A DNA stretch of 64,000 nt from Octopus sinensis. Its lineage: Eukaryota. Each line of letters begins with the position of its first letter. Position 1 is the stretch's first letter. Of the stretch, positions 4,251-64,000 are shown in pieces. The notes beneath the pieces are model-generated. The model worked only from the letters and a program-made list of their open reading frames with translations, searched no databases and was not told the origin of the DNA. The position numbers were made by a program, and so were the translations under genes. The stretch spans positions 9,486,001 through 9,550,000 of the forward strand of contig NC_043005.1 of assembly GCF_006345805.1 (NCBI RefSeq), written 5' to 3'.

Positions 4251-5488
4251 ATGGAAAGCGAACCGGTCCCAGCCAGCAGCTATACTTCAGCCACTGGAAG
4301 AAGTTTAACTGCAGACATGTTACAAGTTCGGGAGGTGAAGTTGGAGAAAAAAGAGCTAAAGGAGTTCAACAGACTTATCGAAAAGGAGGGAACGATTTGA
4401 CAGCTAGTATAACTAAACGGACAGTCATATATAGAACGCTGTCCACGGTAACGAAAAGAATTGAAATAGCTACGTTGGAAGCCACAGTGGAGAGTTTAAA
4501 GAAAGTAAAAGGCCTCACAACATTCTATATCAGGGGGGAAAAGTACGGCACAGTGGAAGTAAGGTTCGCGAGCGAACAGGACGTGATAAACCACTCCACT
4601 CTGGCGCTAAGGACACCGGGGTGGGTAATTCTGCCGACTTACTGTGGCAAACGAGTGGCCAGGGTAAGGATATGCAGAGTGCTCCCGGAGATTGAGGTAG
4701 CGTGGCTGGTTGCAGCCATTATGTACAACAGAAGAGGAAGCAAAATTTTTAAAAGTAACGATTTCGAAAGAGGTAAACTGATGGGGATACGACCTCGAGG
4801 TGACAGTCCAGGTCAGTTTGCAGGACTGGCACAAGATAGAAGAGGAAGTGATACTGCCGGAGGAAGTGAGATTAAGAGTAGTGGTGGAGGGAAGACTCGC
4901 CAACCTGTTACCAGTGTGCAGTAAGGGGACACACGAGAGCAAGGTGTCCCAAGAATGACGAGAAAGATGAACTGGAACAGCAGCAACAGGGTGACGAGCA
5001 GGAGCAAAATTCCGAAGTGGCGACCCCAGTGAGTGAGAAGTGTCCAGAGAAGGTGGAGGGGGAATATAAGGTGGTAACTAGGAAAAAGAAAAGGAAGGAA
5101 AACGTGGATTCACCGCCAAAGAGTTCACTGAAGAAGATGAAAGAAAATAAACAGCAAGAGACACAGCAGAACATTATCAACAAGGAAAACCAACGTAGAA
5201 AATCAAGTGGAACTACAGGAACAAATAACAAAAAGAATCAAAAGAGAAATGGCGTATTGTGACATTTTCGAAAAACACGATAATTGAAAAGAGTCGATAG
5301 TGAGAGTGAAGTTAACAACGGAATATTATCCAGAGAACAGCAAGGCGATTGTAATTAAAGAAGAGAGATGTGCAAGATTGAGAGAATTATTTGGATATAA
5401 GATAGATCTAGCAGGTGTACGCGTGGCGTTTGACGACTTGCCACCTGTAATAGATTATGAGGACCTAATACCGTACATAAGATGGTGA
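4251..5488 (+). pseudogene. Frameshifted L1/Tx1-like ORF1 (gag-like) remnant, copy 1
   Basis: ATG at 4251. Joined frames 4251-4400, 4397-~4730, ~4850-5262 and 5300-5488. Intact CX2CX4HX4C knuckle CYQCAVRGHTRARC at 4906-4947, followed by a Lys/Glu-rich tail. Homologous to 6352-7132 (KRTVIYRTLST, YGTVEVRF, PTYCGKRVARVR). Confidence 0.7.
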
Positions 5489-5578
5489 AAAAATGTAAGT
5501 AAATATTAGGGATTTTAATGACTATAAAACTGATACAGATAGGAAAAAAGGAGAAAAATGAAAAACTATGTATATAGG

Positions 5579-5958
5579 AGCACTCCGTCGGTTACGACGA
5601 TGAGGGTCCCAGCTGATACGATCAACGGAACAGCTTGCTCGTGGAATTAACGTGCAAGTGGCTGAGCACTCCACAGACACGTGTACCCTTAACGTAGTTC
5701 TCGAGGATATTCAGCGTGACACAGGGAGTGACAAGGCCGGCCCTTTCAAATACAGGTACAACAGAAACAGGAAGTAAGAGTGAGAGAAAGTTGTGGTAAA
5801 AGAGTACAGCAGGGATCGCCACCATCCCCTGTCGGAGCCTCGTGTAGCTTTTAGGTGTTTTCGCTCAATAAACACTCACAATGCCCGGTCTGGGAATCGA
5901 AACCGCGATCCTACGACCGCGAGTCCGCTGCCCTAACCACTGGGCCATTGCGCCTACA
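5579..5958 (-). mobile_element. tRNA-derived SINE, group A
   Basis: Minus-strand head GGCGCAATGGCCCAGTGGTTAGGG (A box) and GGTTTCGATTCC (B box), tail GTAACCGACGGAGTG, imperfect TSD gaaaaactat.ta. Other copies at 7700 and 21548. Confidence 0.9.
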
Positions 5959-6351
5959 CGAAAAACTATATAAAAACGTTTAACTAAAACATTTAAAATG
6001 GTGCTACGTGCGAGTGGGGAGCATGCAGCCCTTTCACGTCCATTATTATAATGCATCTTTCATTCATTCGTTTTGTGTTTTTTGTCCCCACTGTGGTGTC
6101 CTATCTGTCCTTGTACAGCCTCCCTCTCTGCATGAGTCTAAGTGCTCAAATAAAGAAATGAGTCATGAGTCAGTACATTCTGTTGTTGGTGGTGTTTTCT
6201 TTAACATGAGTGCGAATTGTTACACATTGTTATTTATAATTCTCGAAGGTCTCCCCGTGTGAGTGTACCACGATTTGTTAAATTACTTAAATTGCTGAAT
6301 TTTCGTCACTGTTTTGTTTGCATAGTATTCGAATCTGTTTATCACCCATCT

Positions 6352-7132
6352 ATGGTAGAATTGGAGAAAGGAAGAGAGATGAAGAGTGGACAAAGTTACG
6401 CAGCGGCAACTACACAAGGAATAAATGCCAACACCCAGGAAGTACGGGAAATTAAAACTGAACCAAGAAAATGGAAGGAAGGAAGCAAATTGCAGGAAAA
6501 GGAAGGAGCCAGTCGAAAACAGACTCTTCGAGAAGAACGGAGAAATAATGTGGCAAAGAGGTCGGTGGTATATAGGACCTTGTCCACGTCCTCGAACAAG
6601 ATAGAGGTCGTCCCGATAGAGGCAATAAAAGAGTGCCTTGAAAATGTCAAGAGGTTGACCTGTTTATACACGTGGAAGAAAGTACGGCACAGTGGAAGTA
6701 AGGTTTGGCAACGAAGAAGACGCCATAAGCCACTCCACTGTGCCGATAAGGACACTGGAATGCGTACTTCTGCCGACGTACTGTGGCAAACGCGTTGCTA
6801 GAGTAAGAATGGTGCTACGGTATGGAGAATGAGGTGAAAATCCTCAAGATAACGAGGACCAAAAATGACAATTGGTGGGAGTATGGTCTCGAGATGCCAT
6901 ACAGGTGAGTTTAAAAAACCTGTATGGCATCACAGAGGAAATCATACTCGTAGAAGACACTAGACTTCGAGTAGTAGTAGAAGGAATACAACCAACATGC
7001 TTCCTATGCGGCAAAAAAAGGGCATATGAAATGTGCCCTGAGAAGGAAAACGAAGCCGAGGAGCAAAAAGGTGAAAAGAAGAGTACCAAAGAGGTAGTAC
7101 AAATAAATTGGAGGACTCCTTCAGAGTCGTAA
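6352..7132 (+). pseudogene. Frameshifted L1/Tx1-like ORF1 remnant, copy 2 (diverged)
   Basis: KRSVVYRTLSTSSNKIE; after a frameshift YGTVEVRF and LLPTYCGKRVARVR; degenerate knuckle PTCFLCGKK...C. Confidence 0.65.
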
Positions 7133-7346
7133 ACAGGAGGAAGAGAAAAGACCGGCTGAGCTCTCCTCCAGAAACCTAAAAAAGGTGGAAAGCGATTGAG
7201 ATGGAGGAGACATCAAGTGCAAGACATCAACAGAATAACTAATGAAAGACGGCGCAGAGGCAGAAACAGCATTACAACAGGATGTGGGAGGAAGCAGCGC
7301 TTATTATTTTGTTTTTTTTATATTTTTTACACGCCCGGACAACATA

Positions 7347-7560
7347 AGGCAGCGAAGTGGCAGAATCCTTACCTCGCTGGACAAATGCTTAGCAGCATTT
7401 CATCCGTCTTTACGTACTGGGTTCAAATTCCACTGGGGGTGGACTTCGCTTTTTATATTTTCAGGATCGATAAAGTGCAAAGTGAGTAGCAGTTAAACAA
7501 TGAGGTTGATGTAATCGACTTGCTTCTTCCCTGAAATTAATGGCAATTTGAAACCGATAT
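7347..7560 (+). mobile_element. Old SINE, group C
   Basis: Diverged match to the group C head (ggcagcgaagtggcagaat, gggttcaaattcc) and to the gatgtaatcgactt body. Confidence 0.75.
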
Positions 7561-7699
7561 TTTAGAGAGTTAGATTAAGAATAACAATAGAACAGTCAAG
7601 GAGTGAGATTTCAACTTATGAAACAAATGGGTAAATTAGCTGTCAGACCAACAGTTATTTTGTGTGTGCGTGTATACATGTATGTATATATGGATGGAA

Positions 7700-8075
7700 G
7701 CACTCCGTCGGTTACGACGACGAGGGTTCCGGTTGATCCGAATCAACGGAACAGCCTGCTCGTGAAATTATCGTCTAAGTGGCTGAGCACTCCACAGACA
7801 CGTGTACCCTTAACGTAGTTCTCGGGGATATTCAGCGTGACACAGAGAGTGACAAGGCCGGCCCTTTGAAATACAGGTACAACAGAAACAGGAAGTAAGA
7901 ATGAAAGTTATGGTGAAAGAGTACAGCAGGGATCACCACCATCCCCTGCCGGAGCCTCGTGGAGCTTTAGGTGTTTTCGCTCAATAAACACTCACAACGC
8001 CCGATCTGGGAATCGAAACTGCGATCCTATGACCGCGAGTCCGCTGCCCTAACCACTGGGCCATTGCGCCTCCAC
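7700..8075 (-). mobile_element. SINE, group A
   Basis: Full-length match to 5579-5958, with an approximate TSD acatgtat.tatat. Confidence 0.9.
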
Positions 8076-8334
8076 ATGTATATATATGTCTTCACACACA
8101 CACACACAGATCGAGCTGCCGCTCCTCGCACGTGATAGCGGCATGGTTGCGGAACGGCGGCGTTGACAGGGTCGGTTCGGCCGAGCAATGCCGACGGCGG
8201 CCTGCTCACATGTGCAGGCCAGTCGGTTGGCGAGCACAGTGATTTTTAGAGGCACAGGTTGTAGAAAGTTGCATGAGGGGGAACGATAACTGGTCTGTAA
8301 TGCAATTCGATGTTCGGGTCCGCACACACATTTT

Positions 8335-8567
8335 TATTTCTTTACTACCCACAAGGGGCTAAACACAGAGGGGACAAACAAGGACAGACAAACAGATTAA
8401 GCCGATTACATCGACCCCAGTGCGTAACTGGTACTTAATTTATCGACCCCGAAAGGATGAAAGGCAAAGTCGACCTCGGCGGAATTTGAACTCAGAACGT
8501 AGCGACAGACGAAATATGGCTACACATTTCGCCCGGCGTGCTAACGTTTCTGCCAGCTCGCCGCCTT
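8335..8567 (-). mobile_element. SINE, group C (short young form)
   Basis: Head GGCGGCGAGCTGGCAGAAACGTTAGC, B box GAGTTCAAATTCC, body GGTCGACTTTGCCTTTCATCCTTTCGGGGTCGATAAATTAAGTACCAG, tail GGGTAGTAAAGAAATA. Confidence 0.9.
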
Positions 8568-8729: not shown

Positions 8730-8910
8730 CCTGTCAGGTCGCTCCGAGTACTACTGGTAACATGTACCGCAGTACAACCAGTTGCATACTCAGCGTTATC
8801 GGCGAATAAACTAGTAATACCACTGAGTGTTCTTGTCTAGGAAGGACACCTTGTCGGACGGAAAACAAGCCCCTCAAAAGGAGAAACTCAAGAGTGTACG
8901 GCCATCCAAT
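8730..8910 (+). mobile_element. Fragment homologous to the repeat at 24570 (possible LINE 5' UTR)
   Basis: gtcaggtc..ggtaacatgta..cagtacaacc..ggacacc..aaaacaa..ctc..gagt..acggccatccaataa is shared with 24572-24766. Confidence 0.5.
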
Positions 8911-8968
8911 AATGTGTATGTGTGTATTCCAGGGAGGTATGCGCCGATACATATGTATAAAAATTCTG

Positions 8969-9374
8969 GGATCTTTTCGGTTTGAACGGCAGTTTTTTCT
9001 ATGAAATTGTCACCCATAATTATGACCCTAGTATCGATCTATTGCATTTCAATCTGTTTTAGGATTAGGGTTAGAGGTGGGGGGAAGGGTATCTTTTTTC
9101 TTCACAAATGTAAATAAACCCTATCTGTTTCTTAAACGAGGGACATATTCATACGGCACAGAATGTTTTTTCCCTCAATAGACCTCAGTGATTGGTTGAA
9201 ACTGTAAAAATTGAAGAAAAAACAACAACAAATATCTTACAAACTACAGAATTTTCTCAATAAAGCCAAGAGAAAAAGACGTTTTATAAACTCATTCTAC
9301 CAGTATACGAAGTTTAAAATTTTTTAGTTACCTAGAAATTATGTTAAAAACTGCCGTTCAAACCGAAAAGATCC
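8969..9374 (+). mobile_element. GG-ended MITE, copy M1 (Merlin-like candidate)
   Basis: Perfect TIRs GGATCTTTTCGGTTTGAACGGCAGTTTTT / AAAAACTGCCGTTCAAACCGAAAAGATCC, no ORF. Strand is assigned relative to the other copies. Confidence 0.9.
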
Positions 9375-9565
9375 CCAGTTGCATACTTAGCGTTATCGGC
9401 GAATAAACCAGTAATACCACCGAGTGTTCTTGTCAAGGAATGACACCTTGTCGGACGGAAAACAAGCCCCTCAAAAGGAGAAACTCAAGAGTGTACGGCC
9501 ATCCAATAATGTGTATGTGTGTATTCCAGGGAGGTATGCGCCGATACATATGTATAAAAATTCTG

Positions 9566-9971
9566 GGATCTTTTCGGTTTGAACGGCAGTTTTTTCTATG
9601 AAATTGTCACCCATAATTATGACCCTAGTATCGATCTATTGCATTTCAATCTGTTTTAGGATTAGGGTTAGAGGTGGGGGGAAGGGTATCTTTTTTCTTC
9701 ACAAATGTAAATAAACCCTATCTGTTTCTTAAACGAGGGACATATTCATACGGCACAGAATGTTTTTTCCCTCAATAGACCTCAGTGATTGGTTGAAACT
9801 GTAAAAATTGAAGAAAAAACAACAACAAATATCTTACAAACTACAGAATTTTCTCAATAAAGCCAAGAGAAAAAGACGTTTTATAAACTCATTCTACCAG
9901 TATACGAAGTTTAAAATTTTTTAGTTACCTAGAAATTATGTTAAAAACTGCCGTTCAAACCGAAAAGATCC
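9566..9971 (+). mobile_element. GG-ended MITE, copy M2
   Basis: Appears identical to M1, including the 11-bp deletion after the left TIR. Part of a 597-bp tandem duplication. Confidence 0.9.
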
Positions 9972-10318
9972 CCAGTTGCATACTTAGCGTTATCGGCGAA
10001 TAAACCAGTAATACCACCGAGTGTTCTTGTCAAGGAATGACACCTTGTCGGACGGAAAACAAGCCCCTCAAAAGGAGAAACTCAAGAGTGTACGGCCATC
10101 CAATAATGTGTATATGTGTATTCCAGGGAGGTATGCGCCATACATATGTATAAATATTCTGGACACTTTAGTGCACTATATACTATATTCCGGCAATCTA
10201 TTCGTGTGAATCCACATTCATTACACCTCTCGTTTTACAACCTTTAGCATTATCCATTGCCAAATATTTTCAAGCACACAGGTAAAGATCATTTGCTTGT
10301 GACAGATATTCTATGAAC

Positions 10319-10740
10319 GGATCTTTTCGGATTGAACGGCAGTTTTTTCTAGCGGTCTCATATGAAATTGTCAGCCATAATTATGACCCTAGTATCGATC
10401 TATTGCATTTCAATCTATTTTATGGTTAGGGTTATGGTTAGGGGTGGGGGGAAGGGTATCTTTTTTTCTTCACAAATGTAAATAAGCCCAATATGTTTCT
10501 TAAACGAGGGACATATTCATACGGCACAGAATGTTGTTTACCTCAATAGACGTCAGTGATTAGTTGAAATTGTAAAAATTGAAGAAAAAAACAACAAATA
10601 TATTACAAACTATAGAATTTTCTCAATAAAGCCAAGAGAAAAAGATGCTTTATAAACACATTCTACCAGTATACGAAGTTTAAAATTTTTTAGTTACCTA
10701 GAAATTATGTTAAAAACTGCCGTCCAAAGCGAAAAGATCC
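10319..10740 (+). mobile_element. GG-ended MITE, copy M3
   Basis: Same TIRs with a few substitutions. Flanked by a ~165-bp direct duplication (10154-10318 and 10741-10904). Confidence 0.9.
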
Positions 10741-11867
10741 ATATTCTGGACAATTTAGTGCACTATATACTATATTCCGGCAATCTATTCGTGTGAATCC
10801 AATTCATTACACCTTTCGTTTTACAACCTTTAGCATTACCCATAGCCAAACATTTTCAAACACACGGGTAAAAATCATTTGCTTCCGACAGATATTCTAT
10901 GAACATAAAACTATGAGAAATCCTTATCAAAAATATTCAGTCTCTCTACTGCTTCTCATTTGTTATTTAACTTCTAGAATGGATTCAATAAAAAGCATAA
11001 AACAGAAAGTTTTTAACCTGTCGTATAATTGTTCTGATATTTAATTTTAATTTCAATGCAATCACTTAGATTATTTTGTTTCTTTCCAAAAGTGTTCTAG
11101 CAAGAAATACGAGAATTACTTCGCATAAAGAATCCATTAGTACACTTAACATGCTCACTTGCTCCATATGATCAATAAATATCAGAATACATGGTTGACT
11201 ATAGTGCAGATTGATCGATCAATGCGTTTAAATGAATTGTGTTTCTTTTGCTAAGACATACGTCTACAGTCATTGTAATATTTAATGTTCGCACTCAACT
11301 GTCTGCGTTGATAAGTTTTTATTTTGTAGTTTTTTAAACCGTACGTGTAATGCATATGTTAGTCAGACTTTTCAGTCGGTTTCAGTGCGGTTTTTAGTTG
11401 TTATCGTTTGTAAAAGCATAAAAAAACTCACCTCTAATACTCTCCAACTTACAAACATATTTTCGTCAAAATATCTAATTTCAATACATGTTGCATGTAA
11501 ATACTTAGCGGATGAGGTACCATTCGTAACATACACCTAAAAGTTATTCTGGTTTACAAGTCCTGAAATTTTCTTTAAATTTAGGTAGAATTGTGAGAGC
11601 AATAATGCTTCACAGTATTTGTTCCAACTCTTTGAGTTCTGAGTTCAAATCTTGCTGAAGTCAACCTGATGGTTCATCCATTCTGGCGGCCTTTAAAGAA
11701 GAAAGATCCTTTCTGTGGAATAGTGATATCATAAGCACGTTAGACCGGACACTTTGTGATATTTTTACTAGCGTTTTACATTCTGAATTCAAATCCTACT
11801 TTAGCCTACATGGATGGTACACTCAACACGTTGCCCGTTTTCATACCACCACATAACCCGTTGGGTT

Positions 11868-12169: not shown

Positions 12170-12845
12170 ATAACACGTTGGGTGTTTTAACAGAGCCCAT
12201 CGCATCACAAGCATTTGAGCTAGGATTTTCTGGTTTCAAAACACTTTTTTCCTTCTTTTCCACAAGTCATAAGCGTTCCCTTCTCTCCTGAACCAAAGTT
12301 TAACAAAATACTAAACCTCTCTTCTAAAACTGAGTGTGGCTGCTGTCATCTAATCAGGGAAAAGCTGAACATTAAGAATTCTTAGTAATTATAGGAATTT
12401 TGTTTTTATCATATTGGTTACAAATTAATCGTTAAGCCACTCTGATATGGCATTACAAATGAAGTTAACGTTAACATATTCTATGCAGAGCCATAAAAAG
12501 ACAAACTATGGCAAATCATGCGGTGTGGGGAAAAATCATTTGCAATCAGCCATTAACTAAAATCGTTTTGATTCAGAGATATGGAAGGCAATTCATCACA
12601 GATGGTTATTATTATAATCTCCTCTTTACGATTCTAGACAAATTCTTGATGACAGAATCATTAAGTAAATGTAGAATAATTAACACTTATATATGAGAAG
12701 AAATAAAGATTGTTCAAAGAAACAAATTAATATTAGACACTTTCAGTAAAGAAAGATAATTAAGTTAGCGTTAAAATATAATATTGGAAACAGTAGTATG
12801 CTAATTATTTTTGTCGTCTCATTTGAGCTATCCGTGAGGTCAATA

Positions 12846-13261
12846 GGATCTTTTCGGTTTAAACGGCAGTTTTTCTAGCGGTGTCATATGAAATTGACAC
12901 CCATAATTATGACAATAGTATCGATCTATTGCATTTTAATTTATTTTAGGGTTAGGGTTAGTTAGGGTTAGGAGGAAGGGTATCTTTTTTTCTTCACAAA
13001 TGTAAATAAACCCAGTCTGTTTCTTAAACGAGGGACATATTCATACGTACAGAATGTTTTCACCTCAATAGACGTCAGTGATTGGTTGAAATTGCAGAAA
13101 TTGAAGAAAAAAACAACAAATATCTTACGAACTATAGAATTTTCTCAATAAAGCCAAGAGAAAAAGATGTTTTATAAACACAATCTACCAGTATACAACG
13201 TTTAAAAGTGTTTAGTTACGTGGAAATTATTTTAGAAACTGCCGTTCAAACCGAAAGATTC
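12846..13261 (+). mobile_element. GG-ended MITE, copy M4, with 8-bp TSD
   Basis: GGTCAATA|GGATC...GATTC|GGTCAATA (12838-12845 and 13262-13269). Confidence 0.9.
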
Positions 13262-13814
13262 GGTCAATAGAACCGTTAAAGAATAATACTAATTAGATGT
13301 ACAGACAATCTTCTTTACCAAAAGAATATATTTGGTCAGCAATAATATTTCGATTCTAAAAAATACGCATCTTTGCTAGGTGGTAATATTTCGACCCTGA
13401 ACGAAGCAAAGCAAAGTTAGTCATTACCGTTCATTCAGAATTCAAATTGAAGAAATTATATACTATCAGGTCGTATATTCTTTGTTTCCATAAAAAACAG
13501 AAATAACTGCCAGGCTTTGGGAATAATATACGACATTTATTTGGCGTTTGTCGGTGGAAATGATGCCATAAAAACAAAACATAAAATATTTTCAAAACTT
13601 GATACCGTGCAGAAGATAAGATTGACAATAACTGCTAACAAATATTTTCACCCTAACAGACAAAAAACATTATGTCTTGTGTTGGACTCTAATGTGTTCG
13701 AATCAGAGACGTATAGTAGTATATGTGATTATATCCTCAAATATCTATTAATATTTCTTATATACTTGCACGATTCAAATAACTAGAAAAATAACTAAAT
13801 ATACAAAGTAATCT

Positions 13815-14238
13815 GGATCTTTTCGGTTTGAACGGCAGTTTTTAACATACTTTCTAGGTAACTAAAAAAATGTTAAACTTCGTATACTGGTAGAATGAGT
13901 TTATAAAACATCTTTTTCTCTTGGCTTTATTGAGAAAATTCTATAGTTTGTAAGATATTTGTTTGTTTTTTTTTTCAATTTCTGCAATTTCAACAAATCG
14001 ATGAGGTCCATTGAGTTAAAAAACATTCTGTGCCGTATGAATATGTCCCTCGTTTAAGAAACAGATTGGGTTTATTTACATTTGTGGAGAAAAAAAGATA
14101 CCCTTCCCCCCACTCCTAACCCTAACCCTAACCCTAAAACAGATAGAAATGCAATAGATCGATACTAGGGTCATAATTATGGGTGACAATTTCATATGAC
14201 ACCGCTAGAAAAAACTGCCGTTCAAACCGAAAAGATCC
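13815..14238 (-). mobile_element. GG-ended MITE, copy M5 (inverted)
   Basis: Perfect TIRs, reverse orientation, internal (CCCTAA)3. Flanked by a 65-bp direct duplication (13750-13814 and 14239-14303). Confidence 0.9.
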
Positions 14239-14807
14239 GATATTTCTTATATACTTGTACGATTTAAATAACTAGAAAAATAACTAAATATACAAAGTAA
14301 TCTTTCTCCCTATTATAGTATCAATTTCTTTGTATTATAACAGCGTTATATACACCATTTAGAAATTTGGCTAATCATAAATGGTAAATTATTTATTCCG
14401 TTTTGCTTTATAGTCGGGCGTAGCTTCTTAAACTGATGTAAATATAACAACGTTTCTTTGTTTTAAATGGAATAATAGTATTTAGCCACGAGATCAATCA
14501 AAGCAAATTACAAAAACAATTACGCTACTCTCATTCTCATACATAGAATCTTTGTATTGAAACATAAAAATAGTTCCACTAATCTACTACTATGTATATT
14601 TAGTTAATTTTCTAGTTATTTTTAAATAATCTTTAAAATAAATATAATCTGTTACGCTTTGGATTTGGTCGCAGATCTGGGCTTACCTAAAAAATCTTAA
14701 ATAAGATTCACACTTGCATCATGGAATGTCTCCCTACATATTTGAAATAAAAAGAGATTTTTCTGATATGTCTCTCATGGATATCGATATCTATCTATCT
14801 ATCTATC

Positions 14808-15205
<398 letters not shown>

Positions 15206-15232
15206 CATATGTATATACATATATATATATAT

Positions 15233-15460
15233 GTCTTTACTACCCACAAGGGGCTAAACACAGAGGAGACAAACAAGGACAGACAAAGGGATTAAGTCGA
15301 TTACATCGACCCCAGTACGTAACTGGTACTTTATTTATCGACCCCGAAAGGATGAAAGGCAAAGTCGACCTCGGCGGAATTTGAACTCACAACGTAACGC
15401 AGACGAAATACCGCTAAGCATTTCGCCCGGCGTGCTAACGTTTCTGCCAGGTCGCCGCCT
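15233..15460 (-). mobile_element. SINE, group C
   Basis: Full match to the 8335-8567 copy, inserted in (AT)n. Confidence 0.9.
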
Positions 15461-26333: not shown

Positions 26334-26704
26334 CTTTTCTGCTCTAGGCACAAGGCCCTAAATTTTGGGGGAGAGGCCAACTGGCACTTAATATATCGAC
26401 CCCGAAAGGAGGAAAAGCAAAGTCGGCCTCAGCGGAATTTGAGCTCAGAACATAAAGACAGACGAAATACCTATTTTTTACTACCCACAAGGGGCTAAAC
26501 ACAGAGGGAACAAAGAAGGACAGACACACGGATTAACTCGATTACATCGACCCCAGTGCGTAACTGGTACTTATTTAATCGACCCCGAAAGGATGGAAGG
26601 CAAAGTCGACATCGGCGGAGTTGTGAACTCAGAACGTAGCGGCAGACGAATAACCGCTAAGCATTTCGCCCGGCGTGCTAACGTTTCTGCCAACTCGCCG
26701 CCTT
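26334..26704 (-). mobile_element. Dimeric SINE, group C (head, body, tail, second body, alternative tail)
   Basis: On the minus strand the tail GGGTAGTAAAAAATA runs into GGTATTTCGTCTG, then a second body, ending GGCCTTGTGCCTAGAGCAGAAAAG. Confidence 0.8.
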
Positions 26705-27317
26705 AAAGATTCTTAAATCTGCTGGAAAATTCTTTCATCTTAATTTGTACCTTAGTGGCAGTAGATAGTAACAAATATTTCATCGCAGATAGGTACTAAC
26801 AATAAAGCTGATACTGTGTTTTAAGATATATACGTAGACGTTTGCGGAAAAACTAAGAGAAATAGTCTATAGGCACAGGCGTAGCTGTGTGATAAGAAGC
26901 TTACTTCCGGTTCCGGTTGTTTAGTTTTCTTCACTCACCTGTAGAAGCCGCCACGCTGGTCTGCAGCGGACGAAAGTTGTTTCTGAAAGAGGCTCTGCTG
27001 TAAGGTAAGACTTTTAGCTTTGTGGGTCTAGTTGAGGTACGTTGTTTGTGATATTTATTTTTTGTTCAAGCAAGGAGTTCTCACTGAATTCTGCGCTTTG
27101 GTCTGCCTGCAGTAGAGCATTTTGTTTTTCTCACTTAATTATGAGAATTGCTATTTGGAGGCGTATCCCGCCCCCAAATTTAATTTAATTTGAGAATTGT
27201 GTTATTCTCAATTAATTGTGAGAACTGTTCCTCTTTAATTTCCTGGGATTTTTTAAAAAACAAATTCGAGGAATTGGACAATAATTGTGAGAAGCTGTCT
27301 TCCAGTTGAATGTTTTT

Positions 27318-30047: not shown

Positions 30048-30401
30048 TGTGTGTGTATATGTATATATATATATATATATTATATATATATATATTATAT
30101 ATATATATATATATATACAATGAAGGGTGAAATTAATTAATTTGGAACAATTATCAATTACACCAAGTAGTCTTCGGCATGTAAAAGCCTCATTCGAGGA
30201 AAATTTAAGTAATACTAAGCAATTAAGTGTTTAGCAACGAATTGCCTTACCACACACCGAATTTAGAAATAGCAGTCAAAGAGATTATAGCTATTTCTTC
30301 TACTAAAAGGGAGATCACAGTAAAGGCACAGCATTTGAAAGGCAAACACAAACAGTAAAAGAGAATGAATTAACGGCAATCTATCATACAGTTTTAAGTC
30401 A

Positions 30402-30487
30402 CCTACGGACGTACGTTTCGAGATCAAGTCTTAGGAAGCATAAGAAGATAACTCTACTTACCCAGACTTCTTCTTTCATCAGGCAGG
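30402..30487 (-). ncRNA. Type-I hammerhead ribozyme, unit 1 (1-nt defect in stem I)
   Basis: cctgc-CTGATGA-stem II (aagtc/gactt, extended)-c-GAAA-CGTACG-TC-cgtagg. Confidence 0.6.
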
Positions 30488-30966
30488 ATACAAACAATAT
30501 GAATGATGAATATGAATTTTGAATACTAGAAGGCACCAACTCAATCAGTATCAGAGCGAGCTAGAAGCCACAGCTAGTATCACCAAATTCAAAGTATGAA
30601 TGAAGCTTGTGTCACCAGTCCCTCCCACCAGCGTGTAGCCAAGACAAAGTGCCGTGGTCATTACTGGGATGAATATGGTTTGAGTAACAATGAAGGGTGA
30701 AATTAATTTGGAACAATATCAATTACACCAAGTAGTCTTCGGTATGTAAAAGCCTCATTCGAGAAAAATTAAGTAATACTAAGCAATTAAGGGTTTAGCA
30801 ACGAATTGCCTTACCACACACCGAATTTAGAAATAGCAGTCAAAGAGATTATAGCTATTTCTTCTACTAAAAGGGAGATCACAGTAAAGGCACAGCATTT
30901 GAAAGGCAAACACAAACAGGTAAAAGAGAATGAATTAACGGCAATCTATCATACAGTTTTAAGTCA

Positions 30967-31054
30967 CCTACGGACGTACGTTTCGAGATCAAGTCTTAGG
31001 AAGCATAAGATTAGATAACTCTACTTTACCAACTTCTTCTTTCATCAGCGCAGG
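30967..31054 (-). ncRNA. Type-I hammerhead ribozyme, unit 2
   Basis: Stem I cctgcg/cgtagg (6 bp, one GU), core CUGAUGA and GAAA, palindromic stem III ACGUACGU, GUC cleavage predicted between 30973 and 30972. Caveat: the 10.1-11.1 pair is A-C rather than G-C. Confidence 0.72.
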
Positions 31055-31498
31055 ATACAAACAATCATGAAGATTGAATATTGAATTTTGAGATACTAGA
31101 AGGCACCAACTCACTCAGTTCAGAGAGCGAGCTAGAACCACAGCTAGTATCACAAATTCAAAGTATGAATGAAAGCTTGTGTCACCAGTCCTTCCACCCG
31201 CGTGTAGCCAAGACAAAGTGCCGTGGTCATTTACTGGATGAATATGGTTTATGAGTACAATGAAGGGTGAAATTAATTAATTTGGAACAATTATCAATTA
31301 CACCAAGTAGTCTTCGGTATGTAAAAGCCTCATTCGAGGAAAATTTAAGTAATACTAAGCAATTAAGGGTTTAGCAACGAATTGCCTTTTGCCTTTCAAA
31401 TGCCGTGCCTTTACTGTGATCTCCCTTTTAGTAGAAGAAATAGCTATAATCTCTTTGACTGCTATTTCTAAATTCGGTGTGTGGTAAGGCAATTCGTT

Positions 31499-34400
31499 CT
31501 TGGGAACGTCTCGTCCTTTACTCTTAGTGGGGGATTGGAATGCTACCTTGGACACGCATGTAGACTACGTGGGTAGAGATAGGAATAGACGGGGATGCAA
31601 ATGCCCAGAGACCTGCTCAGACGCTTTCACTGTCTGACAGGTTCCGACTAGACAGCCGAATGCGCCAACGTGGACATGGAGCAACCGCATCGGGTCGTCG
31701 AGATCGTATCTAGATAGATACTGTGTAGGACAGTAGATAGAGATAGCATAGGATGTCCACAATTCCACATAGTCAGCTACACGGATCACAAACTTGTGAC
31801 ATGTACGCTAGACTTAGGTAAGACACTTAGCAGGGTCCCGGATACTGGAAACTAAACGCGTCTTTCCCATCGAGACAAGTTTTCAGAGACCGGATTAGCA
31901 CACTAGTAAAGAGGGCTTTGACGGGAGCCATCATCAACAACAAATGGTGGTTTGCCCTCAAGAGAGCAGTAAAAGCAGAAGCGATTAGGTACAGCAAAGC
32001 ACTAGCCATAGATAGAAATAGAGTAGAGGGTGAGCTAGTTAAGAAGCTAGAAGAGGCAATTAGAAGCGGCATCGCATCCGACGTTTTGGCGGCGAGGTTG
32101 GCCCTCGACCAACACTTCAACGCCAAACACGAAGGATGTGCTGTCAGAGCTAGGATGCGTGCTCTAAGGAACGAAGGTGTTGGAGCCGCGAGAGAGGCCC
32201 GGGTGGCAGAGGCGCAACAGGGCAACAAAGCCACCATTCGGTCACTGGTAGATGAACAGGGGCGCGAATTGCTCGAGCCAAGTAAAATGTGTGAGGCCTT
32301 TCAGCAGCATTTTGCCCGACTGTTCGGAACGAGTGGAGGGCAAGAACGTAGGGTGGACTTCAGTGCCTACCTACATAGCCTACCACGACTCTCGACAAGA
32401 AAGGCAGGGTGCTGCGAAGGGTGCCATCACGGCGGCGGAATGCGGGAAGCGATGGCAGAATGCTCGAGGGACAAATCACCGGGTTTGGATGGTCTACCCT
32501 ACGAGCTTTACAATTGTATGCCAGACTTGTTTGGAGATCTCTTGGCGGCGGTGTACTGCAACTGGCAGCAAAACGGGAGCATCCTGGTTTTGTGAGCCGA
32601 GGAGCCGTAACACTGCTGAAGAAAGATCTAAACAAGGGAAATGTAATAGATAACTTTAGGCCCATCACTCTGCTTAATGCAGACTTGAAAATTTTGGCCA
32701 AGGTGCTAGCCAAGAGGTTGCGCTTGTCATCGAAAAACTGGTCGACAAGGCGCAAACATGCGCCGTGCCAGCCGGACCATCCATGACAACCTCCATCTGA
32801 TGCGCTACATCATAGACAGGGTAGTTAACGAACCTGGCATGGGTGGGGCCCTGATCAACTTGGATCAATCGAAAGCCTTTGATAGGGTAGACCATCGATA
32901 CTTGGAGGCAGTCCTGAGAGCGGCTGGTTTCGGTCCCGTCTTCCGCGGCTGGATAGCTGCCTTGTACAGAGGCATCCGTTCGGTAATTCGCGTAAATGGA
33001 CATCTATCGAGACCTTCGACATTGCACGTTCGGTCCGTCAGGGATGCCCCCTCTCGGCGCTTCTATACGTATTGACTCTTGAGCCACTACTGCGGAAGCT
33101 GGCGACTCTAAGGGCATCCCGCGAGAATTGGGATGCGGGACGAGCGTGTCTGCATACGCGGACGACGTCACCGTCATAGTGTCTAGCCACGAGCACATCG
33201 AGCTGGTCGGCGAGACACTGAAAAACTACGAAGCGGTGACAGGAGCGAAAATCAACCGGGAAAAGTCAGTGGGCTTGCGACTAGGCACCTGGAGAAGCAA
33301 GCCCATGCCGTCCACCAGCGCCTCCGTCGTGGGACGCTGGACCGACGGCCCGGTTGAGTTGCTCGGGGTCTGGTTTGGTCCGGAGCTCCAAGTGGAGAAG
33401 AACTGGAACGAGATAACGAGTAGGGTGGTCACTCTCGCCCGGCAATGGGCCGAGAGGAAACTGTCCCTAAAAGGTCGAGCGGAGGTGGCGAACACGTACA
33501 TCGCGTCCGTCATCTACTACCGCCTGACCGTCGTACCTTCTCCCGACCCTACCATCACCAAACTACAACGCATCCTCTTTCGCTTCTTGTGGAAAGGATG
33601 CGTCCCGATGGTCAGGCGATCCATTTGCTGTCAACACCCGTTAAAAGGAGGGCTGGGCATGCCGTGGTTGATGATGCGCAGACACGCGCTGAGACTGCGA
33701 CATCTCTGGCTCTATGTAGACGACGGTGAACAGGTGTGGTCGCCGTTTGTGAGGCACGCTTTCCCGCAGCTCGTCTCCATGACCGAACTGCAGTCGTGGA
33801 TCAAAAAGAGGCCGAGGAAGGGCGAATGGCACCGCGAGTGTCGCGTTGCTCTCAAGCAACTCTGCCGTCCTGGGTCGACCTTAAGTGACTTCAACACAAC
33901 CAAAGCATTCTATAGGGGTTTATGGAGGGGAGGTACGACGACGAGCTCGGGGCGAACCTGGACGTCGACGAGGAGTACCTGACCCGCTGTTCAGTGACGA
34001 CTTTCGGGCCAGGGCCCATGGACAACTTCCAGAGATCCCTGGCCTGGCAGTGCTACCGAGAAGCACTACCCGTTCGGATAAGCTCTACAGACACGGCTCG
34101 AGAAACACGGGGCCGACCTGCCCGAGATGCGGTCAGAGCACGAAACCGTTCTGCACGCACTCGTTCAGTGTCCAACAATTCCGACCTGTGGGCTTATGTC
34201 GAACAACTGCTGTCACGTGTGGGACGAGTCGGTTTATCAGCTGAGTCTATCGTCAATATTGTCACGCCTCCTTCCTTCAAACGGGAAGGAAGAGCTATTT
34301 TCATCATCCTTGTGGCTATGGCGAAAGAATGTATCTGGTGGACGCGTCTGAAAGGATTGGAGACAAACACTTTCCTCTCTGGTCAATCTCTCATCAACTT

Positions 34401-34536
34401 CTTCAAGTACCACTTGAAAAGGAAAGTGAGAGTAGAGAGGCAAGTTTTGTCTAGCGAATGTTTTAAAAAAAGATGGGTGAATGTAGCAAGAATGGCACGT
34501 ATGAATGACGAAGCCACCTTGAGCATAGTCCTATGA
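31499..34536 (+). pseudogene. L1/Tx1-clade ORF2 (APE endonuclease C-half, RT, CCHC), frameshifted
   Basis: Motifs LLVGDWNA, TDHKLV, GPGYWKLNAS, KSPGLDGLPYELY, RPITLLNADLKILAK, LDQSKAFDRVDH, VRQGCPLS, YADDVTV, GGLG and CPRCG..ETVLHALVQC across successive frames. Confidence 0.92.
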
Positions 34537-46882: not shown

Positions 46883-47258
46883 AGGCGGTTAGCTGGCCAG
46901 AATAGTGAGCAGGCTGGTCAAAATGCTTTGTGGTATTTCGTCTGCCGTTACGTTCTGAGTTCAAATTCCGCCGAGGTCGACTTTGCCCTTCATCCATTCG
47001 GGGTCGATAAATTAAGTACCAGTTACGCACTGTGGTCGATATAATCGACTTAATCCGTCTGTCTGTCCTTGTTTGTCTCCTCTGTGTTTCTCCCCTTGTG
47101 GATAGTAAAGAAATAGGTATTTCGTCTGCCTTTTGCCCTTGGTTAAAATTCCGTCGAAGTCGATTTTTTTCTCCCACCATTTTAGGGTCGATAAAATAAG
47201 TACTAGTTGAACACTGAGGTCAAATTTGCTGGCCGAGTACCAAACTTTGAAACAAATA
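46883..47258 (+). mobile_element. Dimeric or nested SINE C
   Basis: Direct repeat ggtatttcgtctgcc at 46932-46946 and 47116-47130 brackets a young body. A diverged second body follows. Confidence 0.8.
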
Positions 47259-48518: not shown

Positions 48519-48752
48519 AAAAGGCGGCGAGCTGGCAGAAACGTTAGCACGCCGGGCGAAATGCGTTGTCGTATTTCGTCTGCCGTTACGTTCCGAGTTC
48601 AAATTCCGCCGAGGTCGACTTTGCCTTTCATCCTTCCGGGATCGATAAATTAAGTACCAGTTACGCACTGGGGTCGATGTAATCGACTTAATCCGTTTGT
48701 CTGTCCTTGTTTGTCTCCTCTGTGTTTAGCCCCTTGTGGGTAGTAAAGAAAT
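48519..48752 (+). mobile_element. SINE, group C
   Basis: Full short form, flanked by atatatatatgtgtg on both sides. Confidence 0.92.
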
Positions 48753-48774
48753 ATATATATATATATGTGTGAGA

Positions 48775-58894: not shown

Positions 58895-59100
58895 AATGAA
58901 GGGTGAAATTAATTAATTTGGAATAATTATCAATTACACCAAGTAGTCTTCGGCATGTAAAAACCTCATTCGAGGAAAATTTAAGTAATACTAAGCAATA
59001 AGGGTTTAGCAACGAATTGCCTTACCACATACCGAATTTAGAAATAGCAGTCAAGGGTTATAGCTATTTCTTCTACTAAAAAGGGAGATCTCAGTAAAAA
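58895..59100 (-). mobile_element. Fragment of the 570-bp hammerhead unit (hammerhead not included)
   Basis: About 200 bp matching 30119-30325, with the same terminus next to (AT)n. Confidence 0.85.
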
Positions 59101-62544: not shown

Positions 62545-63868
62545 TAAACTTAGATAAACTTAGATATGTTTCGATGAATGATTGGTCCAGGCCATGTCTA
62601 ACTTAATAGCACCACCTGATAAGATTATTTAAATCCTGTTTAAGTCAAGTTTTGTTTATGGTCCATTCAAGTAGTGAGATTTTGTTGGCTGAGTTGTATC
62701 CAATTATGGGTGGCTTCTCTGGTATTCCTTGAAGGAATCTATTCAGACTTCGTTTAAAGTTGATAGGATCCTGTTCCTCTTTGATCTCTTTCGGGACAAT
62801 GTTAAATAGGGCAGGGCCTGTTGAGGAAAAGAAATTATGTTGTAGTGTACATGTATGTTGTGATCTTGAATTGGGCAGGGCACGTATGGCCCGTGGTCCC
62901 AGTCTTGGATAAACTTTGAAGCTAATGTTCAGGTCGATTGGGCAAAGTTGGCGGTATATTCTCCACATCGTACAAATGATGTACCGCTCACGGCAACGCT
63001 GGAGAGGGTAACGTTTCAAGGCTTTAAGGCGATCCCAATAATCGAGAGCAGCCATGCCTTCAATGCGTTTAGTGAGTGCCCTCTGGGGTGACTCAATTCT
63101 GGAGATGTTTTGTCTTGTATGGGGAGACCACAGTGGGCAGCAGTATTCGATGTGTGGCCGCACAAAGGAGGAGAAAAGGGGTAGATGAATGACGACACTG
63201 AATCTGTGCTGGAAAGTTCTTAAGAGGACAGGAACATCCTACAAGCTATATCGACCTTCTTGTGATGATGTGCACTCCAACTGAGATCGTCATAACAATT
63301 ACACTCAGGTCTCTGATATTGTTAGAGGCTGTGAGCGGTTCCCCTGAAGGAAGAGTATGGCTTGTTTTATTTGAGGAATTTCTTCCAAAATGCATCAGCT
63401 CAAATTTTCCCTCGTTCAGTTGCATTTTGTTTCTCTCTGCCCATTGACTCACAGCATATAGATCAGACTGGAGTTGAGTTCGGTCTGCTTCTTCATTGAC
63501 GATTTGCTGGAGCTTCGTGTCATCAGCAAATATTTTCACTTTGCAGTAATGTACGACACTGGAAAGGTCGTTTATGTAGATTATGAAGAGTAGCGGACGC
63601 AAGACAGTCCCCTGGGGGACACCGCTGGTGACTTTTGCTGGGCTTGAGTGGACTCCATCAACTACAATATGTTGTGTTCTATTTGCTAGGAAATACTTGA
63701 TCCAGTGTAGAACTTTTCCACGGACTCCAACATTTGCCAATTTTGAGAGTAGGATATTATGGTCTACCCTGTTGAATGCTTTACTGAAGTCAAGGTATAT
63801 GACATCAGAGTTCAAACCTGTTCCCAAGGCTTTGAGTACATCTTCAATGTGGTGTAAGAGCTGTGATA
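62545..63868 (-). pseudogene. 5'-truncated CR1/L2-group LINE, RT C-terminal half plus 3' UTR
   Basis: YLDFSKAFNRVDH, SGVPQGTVL.PLLF.IYINDL, IFADDTKL, RPHIEYCCPLWSP, LDYWDRLK; frameshifted; tail (ATCTAAGTTT)2. Confidence 0.9.
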
Positions 63869-64000
63869 TATATAGATATATATATATATATAAATGTATG
63901 CATATATATATATACATATGTATATAAATATATGCATATAAATGTATATATATATATATGTATATACGTATATGTGTGTGTGTGTGTGTTGTGTGTGTGT

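What the first reader, a model, noticed from the sequence alone, without database searches (positions are those of the whole stretch)
10154..10161. The two long duplications overlap by exactly 8 bp, the footprint of one ancestral insertion site
Seen: U ends and V begins with the same octamer ATATTCTG (t). The locus reads U't-M-(U't-M)-U'tV'-M-tV', so an intact empty site U'tV' lies between elements whose outer ends sit at t. M1 and M3 also share GTAAAAATT where M4 and M5 have GCAGAAATT. Inference: one parental insertion t-M-t gave a leftward and a rightward hybrid-end duplication that later recombined, or a composite M-cargo-M hopped into its own empty allele.
Basis: inference. Interest (0 to 1): 0.7.

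Follow-up and report, generated by a model that had tools for sequence, protein, structure and literature searches.

The report
Transposon-made duplications sharing one insertion site
A 0.4-kb non-coding jumping element in an animal (probably mollusc) genome has duplicated the DNA on its left and on its right, and the two duplications overlap by exactly the 8 bases this element family duplicates when it lands; this is a natural relic of a known but rarely seen kind of faulty transposition.

Summary
The locus reads U1(8778-8968)-M1-U2-M2-U3(9972-10161)/V1(10154-10318)-M3-V2(10741-10904). U3 and V1 share ATATTCTG at 10154-10161.

M is a 406-424 bp MITE with 29-bp terminal inverted repeats starting 5'-GG. 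A separate copy, M4, has a perfect 8-bp target-site duplication, so 8 bp is the family's own insertion signature. Independent boundaries would overlap by exactly 8 bp with p about 0.003. Every junction keeps a complete M terminus. The central 347 bp is a footprint-free empty site.

A fifth copy, M5, sits between 64/65-bp direct repeats in the same X-M-X layout.

Best reading (0.55): one insertion at t, then hybrid-end (alternative) transposition to the left and to the right, with the two products ending up on one chromosome.

The second U-M unit is a recent unequal crossover. M1 and M2 are identical, and U2 is U3-like on the left and U1-like on the right.

Sisterhood of M1 and M3 is unresolved and leans slightly against, so a composite M-cargo-M hop remains possible.

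The mechanism is known from the P element and Ac/Ds. This is a new natural instance, possibly in a Merlin-type MITE. No further M copies could be retrieved.

The parts
8778..8968 (+). U1, the outer left copy of the left-flank segment (a+t). It ends with AAATTCTG, the left copy of the ancestral target-site duplication with one later change.
8969..9374 (+). M1, a 406-bp MITE copy with a complete GGATC...GATCC pair of 29-bp terminal inverted repeats. Its left junction is the ancestral one (t|M). Its right junction (M|CCAGTTGC) is secondary.
9375..9565 (+). U2, a mosaic copy. It matches U3 at the 5 left diagnostic sites and U1 at the 3 right ones, so it is the crossover product of U3 x U1.
9566..9971 (+). 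M2, 406/406 identical to M1. It is the recent second unit of the U-M array.
9972..10318 (+). Central intact empty site a-t-b (U3 9972-10161 plus V1 10154-10318). It is collinear with U1 joined to V2 minus one t at 94.8% identity, with no excision footprint.
10154..10161 (+). t = ATATTCTG, the single copy of the ancestral 8-bp target, shared by U3 and V1.
10319..10740 (+). M3, a 422-bp MITE copy. Its right junction is the ancestral one (M|ATATTCTG). Its left junction (CTATGAAC|M) is secondary.
10741..10904 (+). V2, the outer right copy of t+b. It begins with ATATTCTG, the right copy of the ancestral target-site duplication.
12838..13269 (+). M4 (12846-13261), flanked by a perfect 8-bp target-site duplication GGTCAATA (12838-12845 and 13262-13269). 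It is the oldest copy, about 9% from the others, and it fixes the family's duplication length at 8 bp.
13750..14303 (-). M5 (13815-14238, inverted), lying directly between 64/65-bp direct repeats X (13750/1-13814 and 14239/40-14303; 2 mismatches in 64). It is an independent X-M-X structure of the same kind.

Best explanation
M is a non-autonomous cut-and-paste DNA transposon (a MITE) that makes 8-bp target-site duplications.

One copy inserted at ATATTCTG in an originally single-copy segment a-t-b, giving a-t-M-t-b. The locus then underwent two hybrid-end (alternative) transposition events. These are the type called hybrid element insertion for the Drosophila P element.

How such an event works: after replication, the transposase pairs the right end of M on one chromatid with the left end of M on the other. 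It then inserts this hybrid pair into a nearby target on a chromatid that carries the unoccupied site. That chromatid is either the homologue or the precisely rejoined donor flanks.
- A target 182 bp to the left (CCAGTTGC) gives a-t-M-a-t-b, which is U-M-U-V'.
- A target 157 bp to the right (after CTATGAAC) gives a-t-b-M-t-b, which is U'-V-M-V.

The two products came together on one chromosome. This happened either by a crossover within the shared a-t-b or because the second event used the first product as its target. The result is a-t-M-a-t-b-M-t-b.

Much later, an unequal crossover between U3 and U1 added the second U-M unit. M5 with its 64/65-bp flanking repeat is an independent product of the same reaction.

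Shown directly: the anatomy, the 8-bp family duplication length, the intact termini, the intact empty site and the mosaic U2.

Inferred: that ends from two chromatids were used, the order of events, and how the two products were combined.

The structure has no evident function; it is a record of transposon-driven local duplication.
For: (1) M is a TIR element. The 24-nt terminal motif occurs 9 times in the window within 3 mismatches, only at M ends, against 0 expected by chance. The tenth end, M4's right end, has an indel and is seen only by alignment. The 29-bp inverted repeats dominate the single-strand fold (z = -6.7). There is no coding capacity and no transposase gene in the window.

(2) The family target-site duplication is 8 bp: M4 has GGTCAATA on both sides, 8/8.

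(3) M1's left flank (AAATTCTG) and M3's right flank (ATATTCTG) are the two halves of one canonical 8-bp duplication of the single central t. The chance of an exact 8-bp overlap is 0.0028.

(4) All junctions, ancestral and secondary, carry complete GGATC/GATCC termini with no loss, filler or microhomology. This is expected for transposase strand transfer and not for breakage or template switching.

(5) There is one element between the two copies and none at the outer borders. That excludes recombination between two M copies as the origin, the same argument as in PMC3744419.

(6) The central 347 bp is a footprint-free empty site.

(7) The same X-M-X layout occurs independently at M5. No other nearby direct-repeat pair in the window has a spacer bounded by inverted repeats.

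(8) The divergences are homogeneous: U 7/190, V 10/164, X 2/64, M1/M3 21/404, p = 0.65. They equal the divergence between separate M loci (M1/M5 20/404). The duplications therefore date to the period when the family was active.

(9) U2 is U3-like at 5 left sites and U1-like at 3 right sites, and M1 = M2 at 406/406. This is exactly the product of a U3 x U1 unequal crossover.

(10) Precedents exist. Hybrid element insertion of the P element is reported to give rearrangements, including duplications, next to the element (cited). Three small tandem duplications bounded by hAT MITEs, consistent with alternative transposition, were found among 7,611 insertions in maize B73 (PMC3744419).
Against: The model requires M1 and M3 to descend from one insertion. 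The four-copy comparison does not show this:
- 3 dispersed sites group M1+M5 against M3+M4;
- 2 adjacent sites group M1+M3;
- the sister topology is 1.9 lnL units worse and wins 34% of bootstraps;
- three parallel changes have a rough probability of 0.004-0.05.

The history needs several steps: one insertion, two aberrant events anchored at the same site, and a way of bringing both products onto one chromosome.

If sister chromatids alone were used, the donor flanks must have rejoined precisely, with a single t and no footprint. That is atypical for hAT and P excision, although annealing of the two 8-bp t copies could do it.

Three such structures among four independent M loci is far more frequent than the maize figure of 3 in 7,611.

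No reciprocal deletion products, other haplotypes or further family members could be examined. All six external DNA scans were empty.
Confidence: 0.55

Rival explanations
1. Composite (macro)transposon. Two independent M insertions in the same orientation flanked a-t-b on one homologue (x-M-a-t-b-M-y). The transposase used the two outer ends, and the 1.18-kb composite M-a-t-b-M inserted with a normal 8-bp duplication at t of the empty allele.
For: The structure can be read exactly as a-t-[M1-a-t-b-M3]-t-b, with t as a normal 8-bp duplication at 7/8. It does not require M1 and M3 to be sisters, which fits the slight phylogenetic preference for (M1,M5)|(M3,M4). M copies do cluster closely here: M4 and M5 are 553 bp apart. 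Macrotransposition by linked elements in direct orientation is documented for maize Ac (reference 16 listed).
Against: The composite would have to land inside the 347 bp allelic to its own cargo, on a homologue lacking both M copies. That is a very small target with no cis-linkage advantage. If the target had been the sister chromatid, two outer M copies would remain, or would have had to excise without leaving a doubled 8-mer. None is seen at the start of U1 or the end of V2. The model does not explain the single-element X-M-X at M5, and it makes the resemblance of U-M-U and V-M-V to M5 a coincidence.
Confidence: 0.15
2. Two independent one-step insertions with abnormally wide stagger. Each M entered the empty site with its two strand transfers 165-190 bp apart instead of 8 bp, perhaps across one nucleosome, so U, V and X are giant target-site duplications. 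On this view t is a target hot spot at which one end of each event attached correctly.
For: X-M-X with intact termini is exactly what a giant target-site duplication would look like. One step per structure would explain why 3 of 4 loci show it. The duplication ages equal the element ages. Lengths of 165 and 190 bp are close to one nucleosome repeat (my own observation, not tested).
Against: The 8-bp overlap becomes a coincidence (p about 0.003), or needs a hot spot used twice by complementary half-events. The other junction octamers (CCAGTTGC, CTATGAAC, GGTCAATA, AGATTACT) share no motif with t. I know of no precedent for such stagger in eukaryotic DDE transposons. M4 shows that the family makes normal 8-bp duplications.
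Confidence: 0.1
3. A mechanism not involving transposase: replication slippage, fork stalling and template switching at the MITE hairpin, or recombination between repeats. This would have produced tandem units (U+M, period 597; V+M, period 587) that happen to contain M.
For: The U-M array did expand by homologous unequal crossover. The inverted repeats can form a strong hairpin in single-stranded DNA, which could stall a replication fork.
Against: All three primary duplications start and end exactly at complete M termini, with no microhomology and no lost or added bases. Recombination between M copies would leave M at an outer border, and none is there. Nothing in this model predicts the 8-bp overlap that equals the family's duplication length. 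No other repeat pair in the window has this layout.
Confidence: 0.05
4. Assembly artefact, in whole or in part. For example, the U2-M2 unit could be a false duplication.
For: M1 and M2 are 100% identical and the unit is short. No reads were available to check it.
Against: The primary copies differ by 4-6% with their own indels, which assemblers do not invent. U2 is a clean two-part mosaic, as expected of a real crossover.
Confidence: 0.03

Closest known systems
Hybrid element insertion (HEI) of the Drosophila P element (Gray, Tanaka & Sved 1996; Preston, Sved & Engels 1996; cited)
   Same: The left end of one copy and the right end of its sister or homologous copy act together and insert nearby. 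The product keeps the element at the original site with a duplication (or deletion) of flanking DNA directly abutting one terminus, in an X-element-X layout. The target-site duplication is 8 bp. The details of HEI products rest on my knowledge of those papers, which are not held in the library.
   Different: The HEI cases were produced and selected in dysgenic crosses. Here it is an old natural relic in a non-insect genome. It involves a 0.4-kb MITE whose termini (5'-GG) are not P-like. Both a leftward and a rightward product of one donor site are joined on one chromosome. The reciprocal products cannot be seen.
Alternative transposition of maize Ac/Ds and the natural tandem direct duplications at dhAT MITEs in B73 (PMC3744419)
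   Same: The duplication endpoints coincide precisely with transposon termini. One terminus keeps the original 8-bp duplication and the other has a non-matching flank. The small natural examples are of similar size and age (147 bp at 93% identity, 1.26 kb at 96%). The same argument against recombination between elements applies.
   Different: The maize reversed-ends products read TSD-TE-TSD-X-TE-TSD-X: two elements, each starting a repeat, the first with both duplications. Here each primary duplication has a single element between the copies and none in front, so the reversed-ends layout is not met. The frequency in maize is 3 per 7,611 insertions, against 3 of 4 loci here.
Macrotransposition by two linked elements in direct orientation (Huang & Dooner 2008, listed)
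   Same: The locus can be parsed as M-cargo-M bounded by an 8-bp duplication.
   Different: The cargo is the same sequence as the target and is centred on the insertion point. No donor locus is known.
Merlin superfamily of DNA transposons and their MITEs (Feschotte 2004, as summarised in PMC8101967)
   Same: Terminal inverted repeats of 24 bp or more with a conserved terminal 5'-GG-3', and target-site duplications of 8-9 bp. M has 29-bp repeats starting GG and an 8-bp duplication.
   Different: No transposase with matching repeats was available, so the assignment rests on structural hallmarks only. hAT and P elements also make 8-bp duplications.

Membership tests
MITE (non-autonomous TIR DNA transposon) | Terminal inverted repeats at both ends | tested here: met
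   29-bp repeat GGATCTTTTCGGTTTGAACGGCAGTTTTT, perfect in M1, M2 and M5. 9 of the 10 ends are found within 3 mismatches, against 0 expected.
MITE (non-autonomous TIR DNA transposon) | Target-site duplication of fixed length | tested here: met
   M4 has GGTCAATA 8/8 on both sides. M1-left and M3-right match 7/8, and 8/8 to the central t. Only one simple insertion was available.
MITE (non-autonomous TIR DNA transposon) | Small, non-coding, multicopy | tested here: met
   406-424 bp, 5 copies, and no ORF of 45 aa or more lying within an M copy. There is no transposase in the window.
Merlin superfamily | Repeats of 24 bp or more ending in 5'-GG-3', with 8-9 bp duplications (PMC8101967) | tested here: met
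Merlin superfamily | Mobilised by a DDE_Tnp_IS1595-type transposase whose element has matching repeats | not testable with these tools
   No such gene is in the window and the host genome could not be searched.
hAT superfamily | 8-bp duplication | tested here: met
hAT superfamily | Short repeats usually starting 5'-YARNG (CAG/TAG) (my knowledge) | tested here: not met
   The termini are GGATC.
Hybrid-end / alternative-transposition duplication | Duplication endpoints coincide exactly with intact transposon termini | tested here: met
   Junction table
Hybrid-end / alternative-transposition duplication | One terminus keeps the original duplicated flank; the other abuts a new sequence with no matching 8-mer | tested here: met
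   M1: t on the left, CCAGTTGC on the right. M3: CTATGAAC on the left, t on the right.
Hybrid-end / alternative-transposition duplication | No element at the outer border of the duplication, which excludes recombination between two copies | tested here: met
Hybrid-end / alternative-transposition duplication | A reciprocal deletion product sharing the 8-bp duplication of the new junction | not testable with these tools
   This needs other haplotypes.
Hybrid-end / alternative-transposition duplication | The two element copies descend from one insertion | tested here: inconclusive
   2 against 3 informative sites. lnL is -873.6 for the sister topology against -871.7. Bootstrap is 34:66.
Reversed-ends-transposition tandem duplication (maize type) | Each repeat is initiated by a transposon copy, and the first is flanked by both target-site duplications | tested here: not met
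   The layout is X-M-X, not M-X-M-X.

The most novel reading that the evidence does not exclude
Long flanking duplications may be the habitual output of this MITE family rather than rare accidents. Its transposase might routinely pair ends from different chromatids, or place its two strand transfers roughly one nucleosome apart. Either way the family would act as a dedicated generator of 60-200 bp tandem duplications around itself. The figures that prompt this reading are 3 of 4 independent loci here, against 3 of 7,611 hAT insertions in maize.
Probability: 0.15. Interest if true: 0.65.

Novelty: new member of a known kind. Interest (0 to 1): 0.4.

Why it matters
Alternative transposition is well established in engineered or selected systems such as P-M dysgenesis and maize p1 alleles. 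Natural genomic relics are scarce: three were found among 7,611 maize hAT insertions.

This locus preserves both the leftward and the rightward product of one donor site, the intact empty site between them, and a later recombinational expansion. It shows step by step how a small MITE can seed a local tandem array and multiply itself without ordinary transposition.

If the M family proves to be Merlin-type, this would extend the reaction to a superfamily for which, to my knowledge, it has not been described.

The high local frequency (3 of 4 loci) is worth a genome-wide census. There is no sign of a cellular function.

Tried and rejected
1. More M copies for a rooted family tree. Six exact-pattern scans of viral, metagenome and prokaryote-genome collections, using conserved internal and terminal motifs, all returned nothing.

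2. Other haplotypes through a nearby ORF (6217-6801). That protein is not on record.

3. The same species through a LINE reverse-transcriptase ORF. The best hits are 60-71% identical on tiny contigs. One named hit is a cuttlefish protein at 50% identity over 39% of the query. The long ENA contig fetched (L001) is a different organism: 43% GC, with no M or SINE.

4. Rfam found no families in the window. Tandem Repeats Finder found nothing because the periods (597 and 587) exceed its limit.

5. Recombination between two M copies as the origin of the primary duplications. Rejected, because there is no M at an outer border.

6. Maize-type reversed-ends layout. Rejected, because the element order is wrong.

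7. One concerted double insertion of two excised M copies at t. Rejected on paper: the central copy would lack t, since each target strand supplies t only once.

8. Break repair after excision that copies past M on the sister chromatid. Rejected, because it predicts t-b-a-t between the two M copies and not a-t-b.

9. Gene conversion of M3 by M4 to explain their three shared sites. Unlikely, because M4's 24 private changes interleave with those sites.

10. A second example at another family, as a control. The other nearby direct-repeat pairs in the window have no TIR-bounded spacer. The 570-bp repeat at 30.1-31.5 kb is a different kind of structure.

Full report
**Context.**
The window is eukaryotic. 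It is 36.5% G+C and full of microsatellites. It carries tRNA-like SINE copies and LINE reverse-transcriptase fragments. The only named relative of one reverse-transcriptase ORF is a cuttlefish protein at 50% identity over 39% of the query. A cephalopod or other mollusc is therefore plausible but not established.

**Observation.**
Self-BLAST and alignments give this map:

| Part | Coordinates |
|---|---|
| U1 | 8778-8968 |
| M1 | 8969-9374 |
| U2 | 9375-9565 |
| M2 | 9566-9971 |
| U3 | 9972-10161 |
| V1 | 10154-10318 |
| M3 | 10319-10740 |
| V2 | 10741-10904 |
| M4 (+) | 12846-13261 |
| M5 (-) | 13815-14238 |

U3 and V1 share ATATTCTG at 10154-10161. V2 starts with the same octamer. U1 and U2 end with AAATTCTG. 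The octamer is not rare in itself: it occurs twice in the window against about 5 expected. What matters is its position.

**What M is.**
All five copies begin GGATCTTTTCGG... and end ...CCGAAAAGATCC (...GATTC in M4). The 29-bp inverted repeats are perfect in M1, M2 and M5.
- The 24-nt terminal motif is found only at M ends, 9 times within 3 mismatches, with none expected by chance.
- M is 406-424 bp and A+T-rich. It carries a variable (TTAGGG)-like tract and no ORF.
- The window has no transposase gene.
- M4 is flanked by GGTCAATA on both sides, 8/8.

M is therefore a MITE with an 8-bp target-site duplication. Inverted repeats of 24 bp or more that start 5'-GG, together with 8-9 bp duplications, are the published hallmarks of the Merlin superfamily (PMC8101967). 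hAT and P elements also make 8-bp duplications but usually have other termini. Superfamily membership cannot be settled without the transposase.

**Why the overlap is meaningful.**
Once the M termini are fixed by the inverted repeats, M1's left neighbour is the last 8 bp of U and M3's right neighbour is the first 8 bp of V. Both are copies of the single central t. Read together, they form a canonical t-M-t insertion site.
- If the two boundaries were independent positions in the 347-bp segment, an exact 8-bp overlap has p = 0.0028. The value 8 was fixed independently by M4.
- Joining outer-left U1 to outer-right V2 minus one t reproduces the central 347 bp end to end. There are 329 matches, 17 mismatches and two 1-bp indels, none at the junction. 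The middle is therefore an intact, footprint-free empty site.
- The secondary junctions (M1|CCAGTTGC and CTATGAAC|M3) keep complete termini, without filler or microhomology.

**A third example.**
M5 lies directly between two copies of a 64/65-bp sequence (13750/1-13814 and 14239/40-14303; 2 mismatches in 64), again with complete termini. Three of the four independent M loci therefore have the X-M-X layout. None of the other nearby direct-repeat pairs in the window has a spacer bounded by inverted repeats.

**The recent layer.**
M1 and M2 are identical at 406/406. U2 equals U3 at the five left diagnostic sites and U1 at the three right ones. That is the exact product of an unequal crossover between U3 and U1. 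The primary structure was therefore U-M-U'tV'-M-tV', and the second U-M unit is a late addition.

**Ages.**
Substitution differences are as follows.

| Pair | Differences | Percent |
|---|---|---|
| U1/U3 | 7/190 | 3.7% |
| V1/V2 | 10/164 | 6.1% |
| X copies | 2/64 | 3.1% |
| M1/M3 | 21/404 | 5.2% |
| M1/M5 | 20/404 | 5.0% |
| M3/M5 | 28/422 | 6.6% |

The first four rows are homogeneous (p = 0.65). M4 is about 9% from every other copy. The duplications are therefore as old as the young M copies themselves. They arose while the family was moving.

**Mechanism.**
The anatomy matches what hybrid-end (alternative) transposition predicts. The right end of M on one chromatid and the left end on the other are used together, and they insert into a nearby site on a chromatid carrying the unoccupied sequence.
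- A target to the left of the donor site gives a-t-M-a-t-b.
- A target to the right gives a-t-b-M-t-b.
- In each product one terminus keeps its original flank including t, and the other acquires a new flank with no matching 8-mer. The 8-bp duplication of the new target is split between the reciprocal products.

This reaction is known as hybrid element insertion for P elements (references). A related reaction in maize Ac/Ds gives tandem duplications whose endpoints coincide with transposon termini. Three small natural cases were found at hAT MITEs among 7,611 insertions (PMC3744419). The maize reversed-ends layout (TE-X-TE-X) is not what is seen here; the P-type single-element layout is.

To obtain the present chromosome, the leftward and rightward products must have been combined. 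That needs either a crossover within the shared a-t-b or a second event that used the first product as its target.

**Weak points.**
- The model needs M1 and M3 to be copies of one insertion. With only four distinct copies the tree is almost a star. Three dispersed sites, two of them transversions, unite M1+M5 against M3+M4. Maximum likelihood prefers the latter by 1.9 lnL units, and bootstrap support is 66:34. This is a Bayes factor of only about 3-7 against sisterhood, but it keeps the composite-transposon reading alive.
- If only sister chromatids took part, the donor flanks must have rejoined precisely.
- The history has several steps.
- The local frequency is surprisingly high.

**Rivals.**
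- Composite M-a-t-b-M inserted at t of the empty allele. This fits the anatomy and the phylogeny. It needs a hit on a 347-bp allelic target and does not explain M5.
- Two independent wide-stagger insertions. This explains the frequency but makes the 8-bp overlap a 0.3% coincidence or requires a hot spot.
- Replication or recombination mechanisms. These fail on the exact termini and on the absence of outer M copies.
- Assembly error. This is implausible for copies 4-6% apart, and untested for the identical U2-M2 unit.

I also worked through a concerted double insertion and aberrant break repair on paper. Each predicts the wrong central sequence.

**Verdict.**
The interpretation that the 8 bp mark one ancestral insertion site is well supported. 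The exact route is not resolved: hybrid-end events are favoured at about 0.55 and a composite hop stands at about 0.15. The mechanism belongs to a known class, and this is a clear natural instance of it, possibly in a Merlin-type MITE.

Noticed in passing
window 10306-10312 and 10892-10898; also 13751-13758 and 14240-14247: The heptamer ATATTCT of the ancestral target t recurs 6 bp inside the right end of V, next to the secondary V1|M3 junction. A related ATATTTCT opens the repeat X beside M5. The register differs from t, so this is not a simple target consensus. A post-hoc chance estimate is roughly 0.3-5%. It may reflect a weak target-context preference or may be coincidence.
   Followed up: partly
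window 14588-14621: A 34-bp inverted partial copy (32/34) of the repeat X lies about 285 bp downstream of its right copy. X may itself be the end of another small inverted-repeat element into which M5 inserted.
   Followed up: partly
M copies, e.g. window 14100-14135 (M5) and 10405-10445 (M3): Each M carries a telomere-like (TTAGGG)n tract followed by a G-run. The number of units differs between copies: M1/M2 is one unit shorter, and M4 differs again.
   Followed up: no
window 30117-31498: A 570-bp unit is repeated 2.2 times in tandem at 94% identity. It is followed by a 111-bp segment of the unit in inverted orientation at 99% identity. This lies just upstream of LINE-like ORFs at 31.8-34.5 kb. 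A partial copy of the unit is at 58895-59098. It is not bounded by inverted repeats and is a different kind of structure from the M locus.
   Followed up: partly
window 4400-8100: An older tandem duplication with a period of about 2.1 kb (4540-4671 / 6679-6810 at 83%; 5567-5959 / 7681-8075 at 91%). It contains paralogous ORFs of 175 and 194 aa with no Pfam match. It sits directly upstream of the M cluster.
   Followed up: no
window 8335-8566, 15230-15460, 26379-26705, 46883-47115, 48522-48753: Multiple copies of a roughly 230-bp tRNA-like SINE (…GGCGGAATTTGAACTCAGAACGTAGCG…). One copy ends 210 bp before U1.
   Followed up: no
window 12846-14238: M4 (+) and M5 (-) lie 553 bp apart with their right ends facing each other. 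All five M copies sit within 5.5 kb and none is in the other 58 kb, which suggests local hopping.
   Followed up: partly
window 31827-34536 and 62645-63927: Two LINE reverse-transcriptase remnants: RVT_1 at E = 4e-5 and 3e-20. The first is split over several frames.
   Followed up: partly
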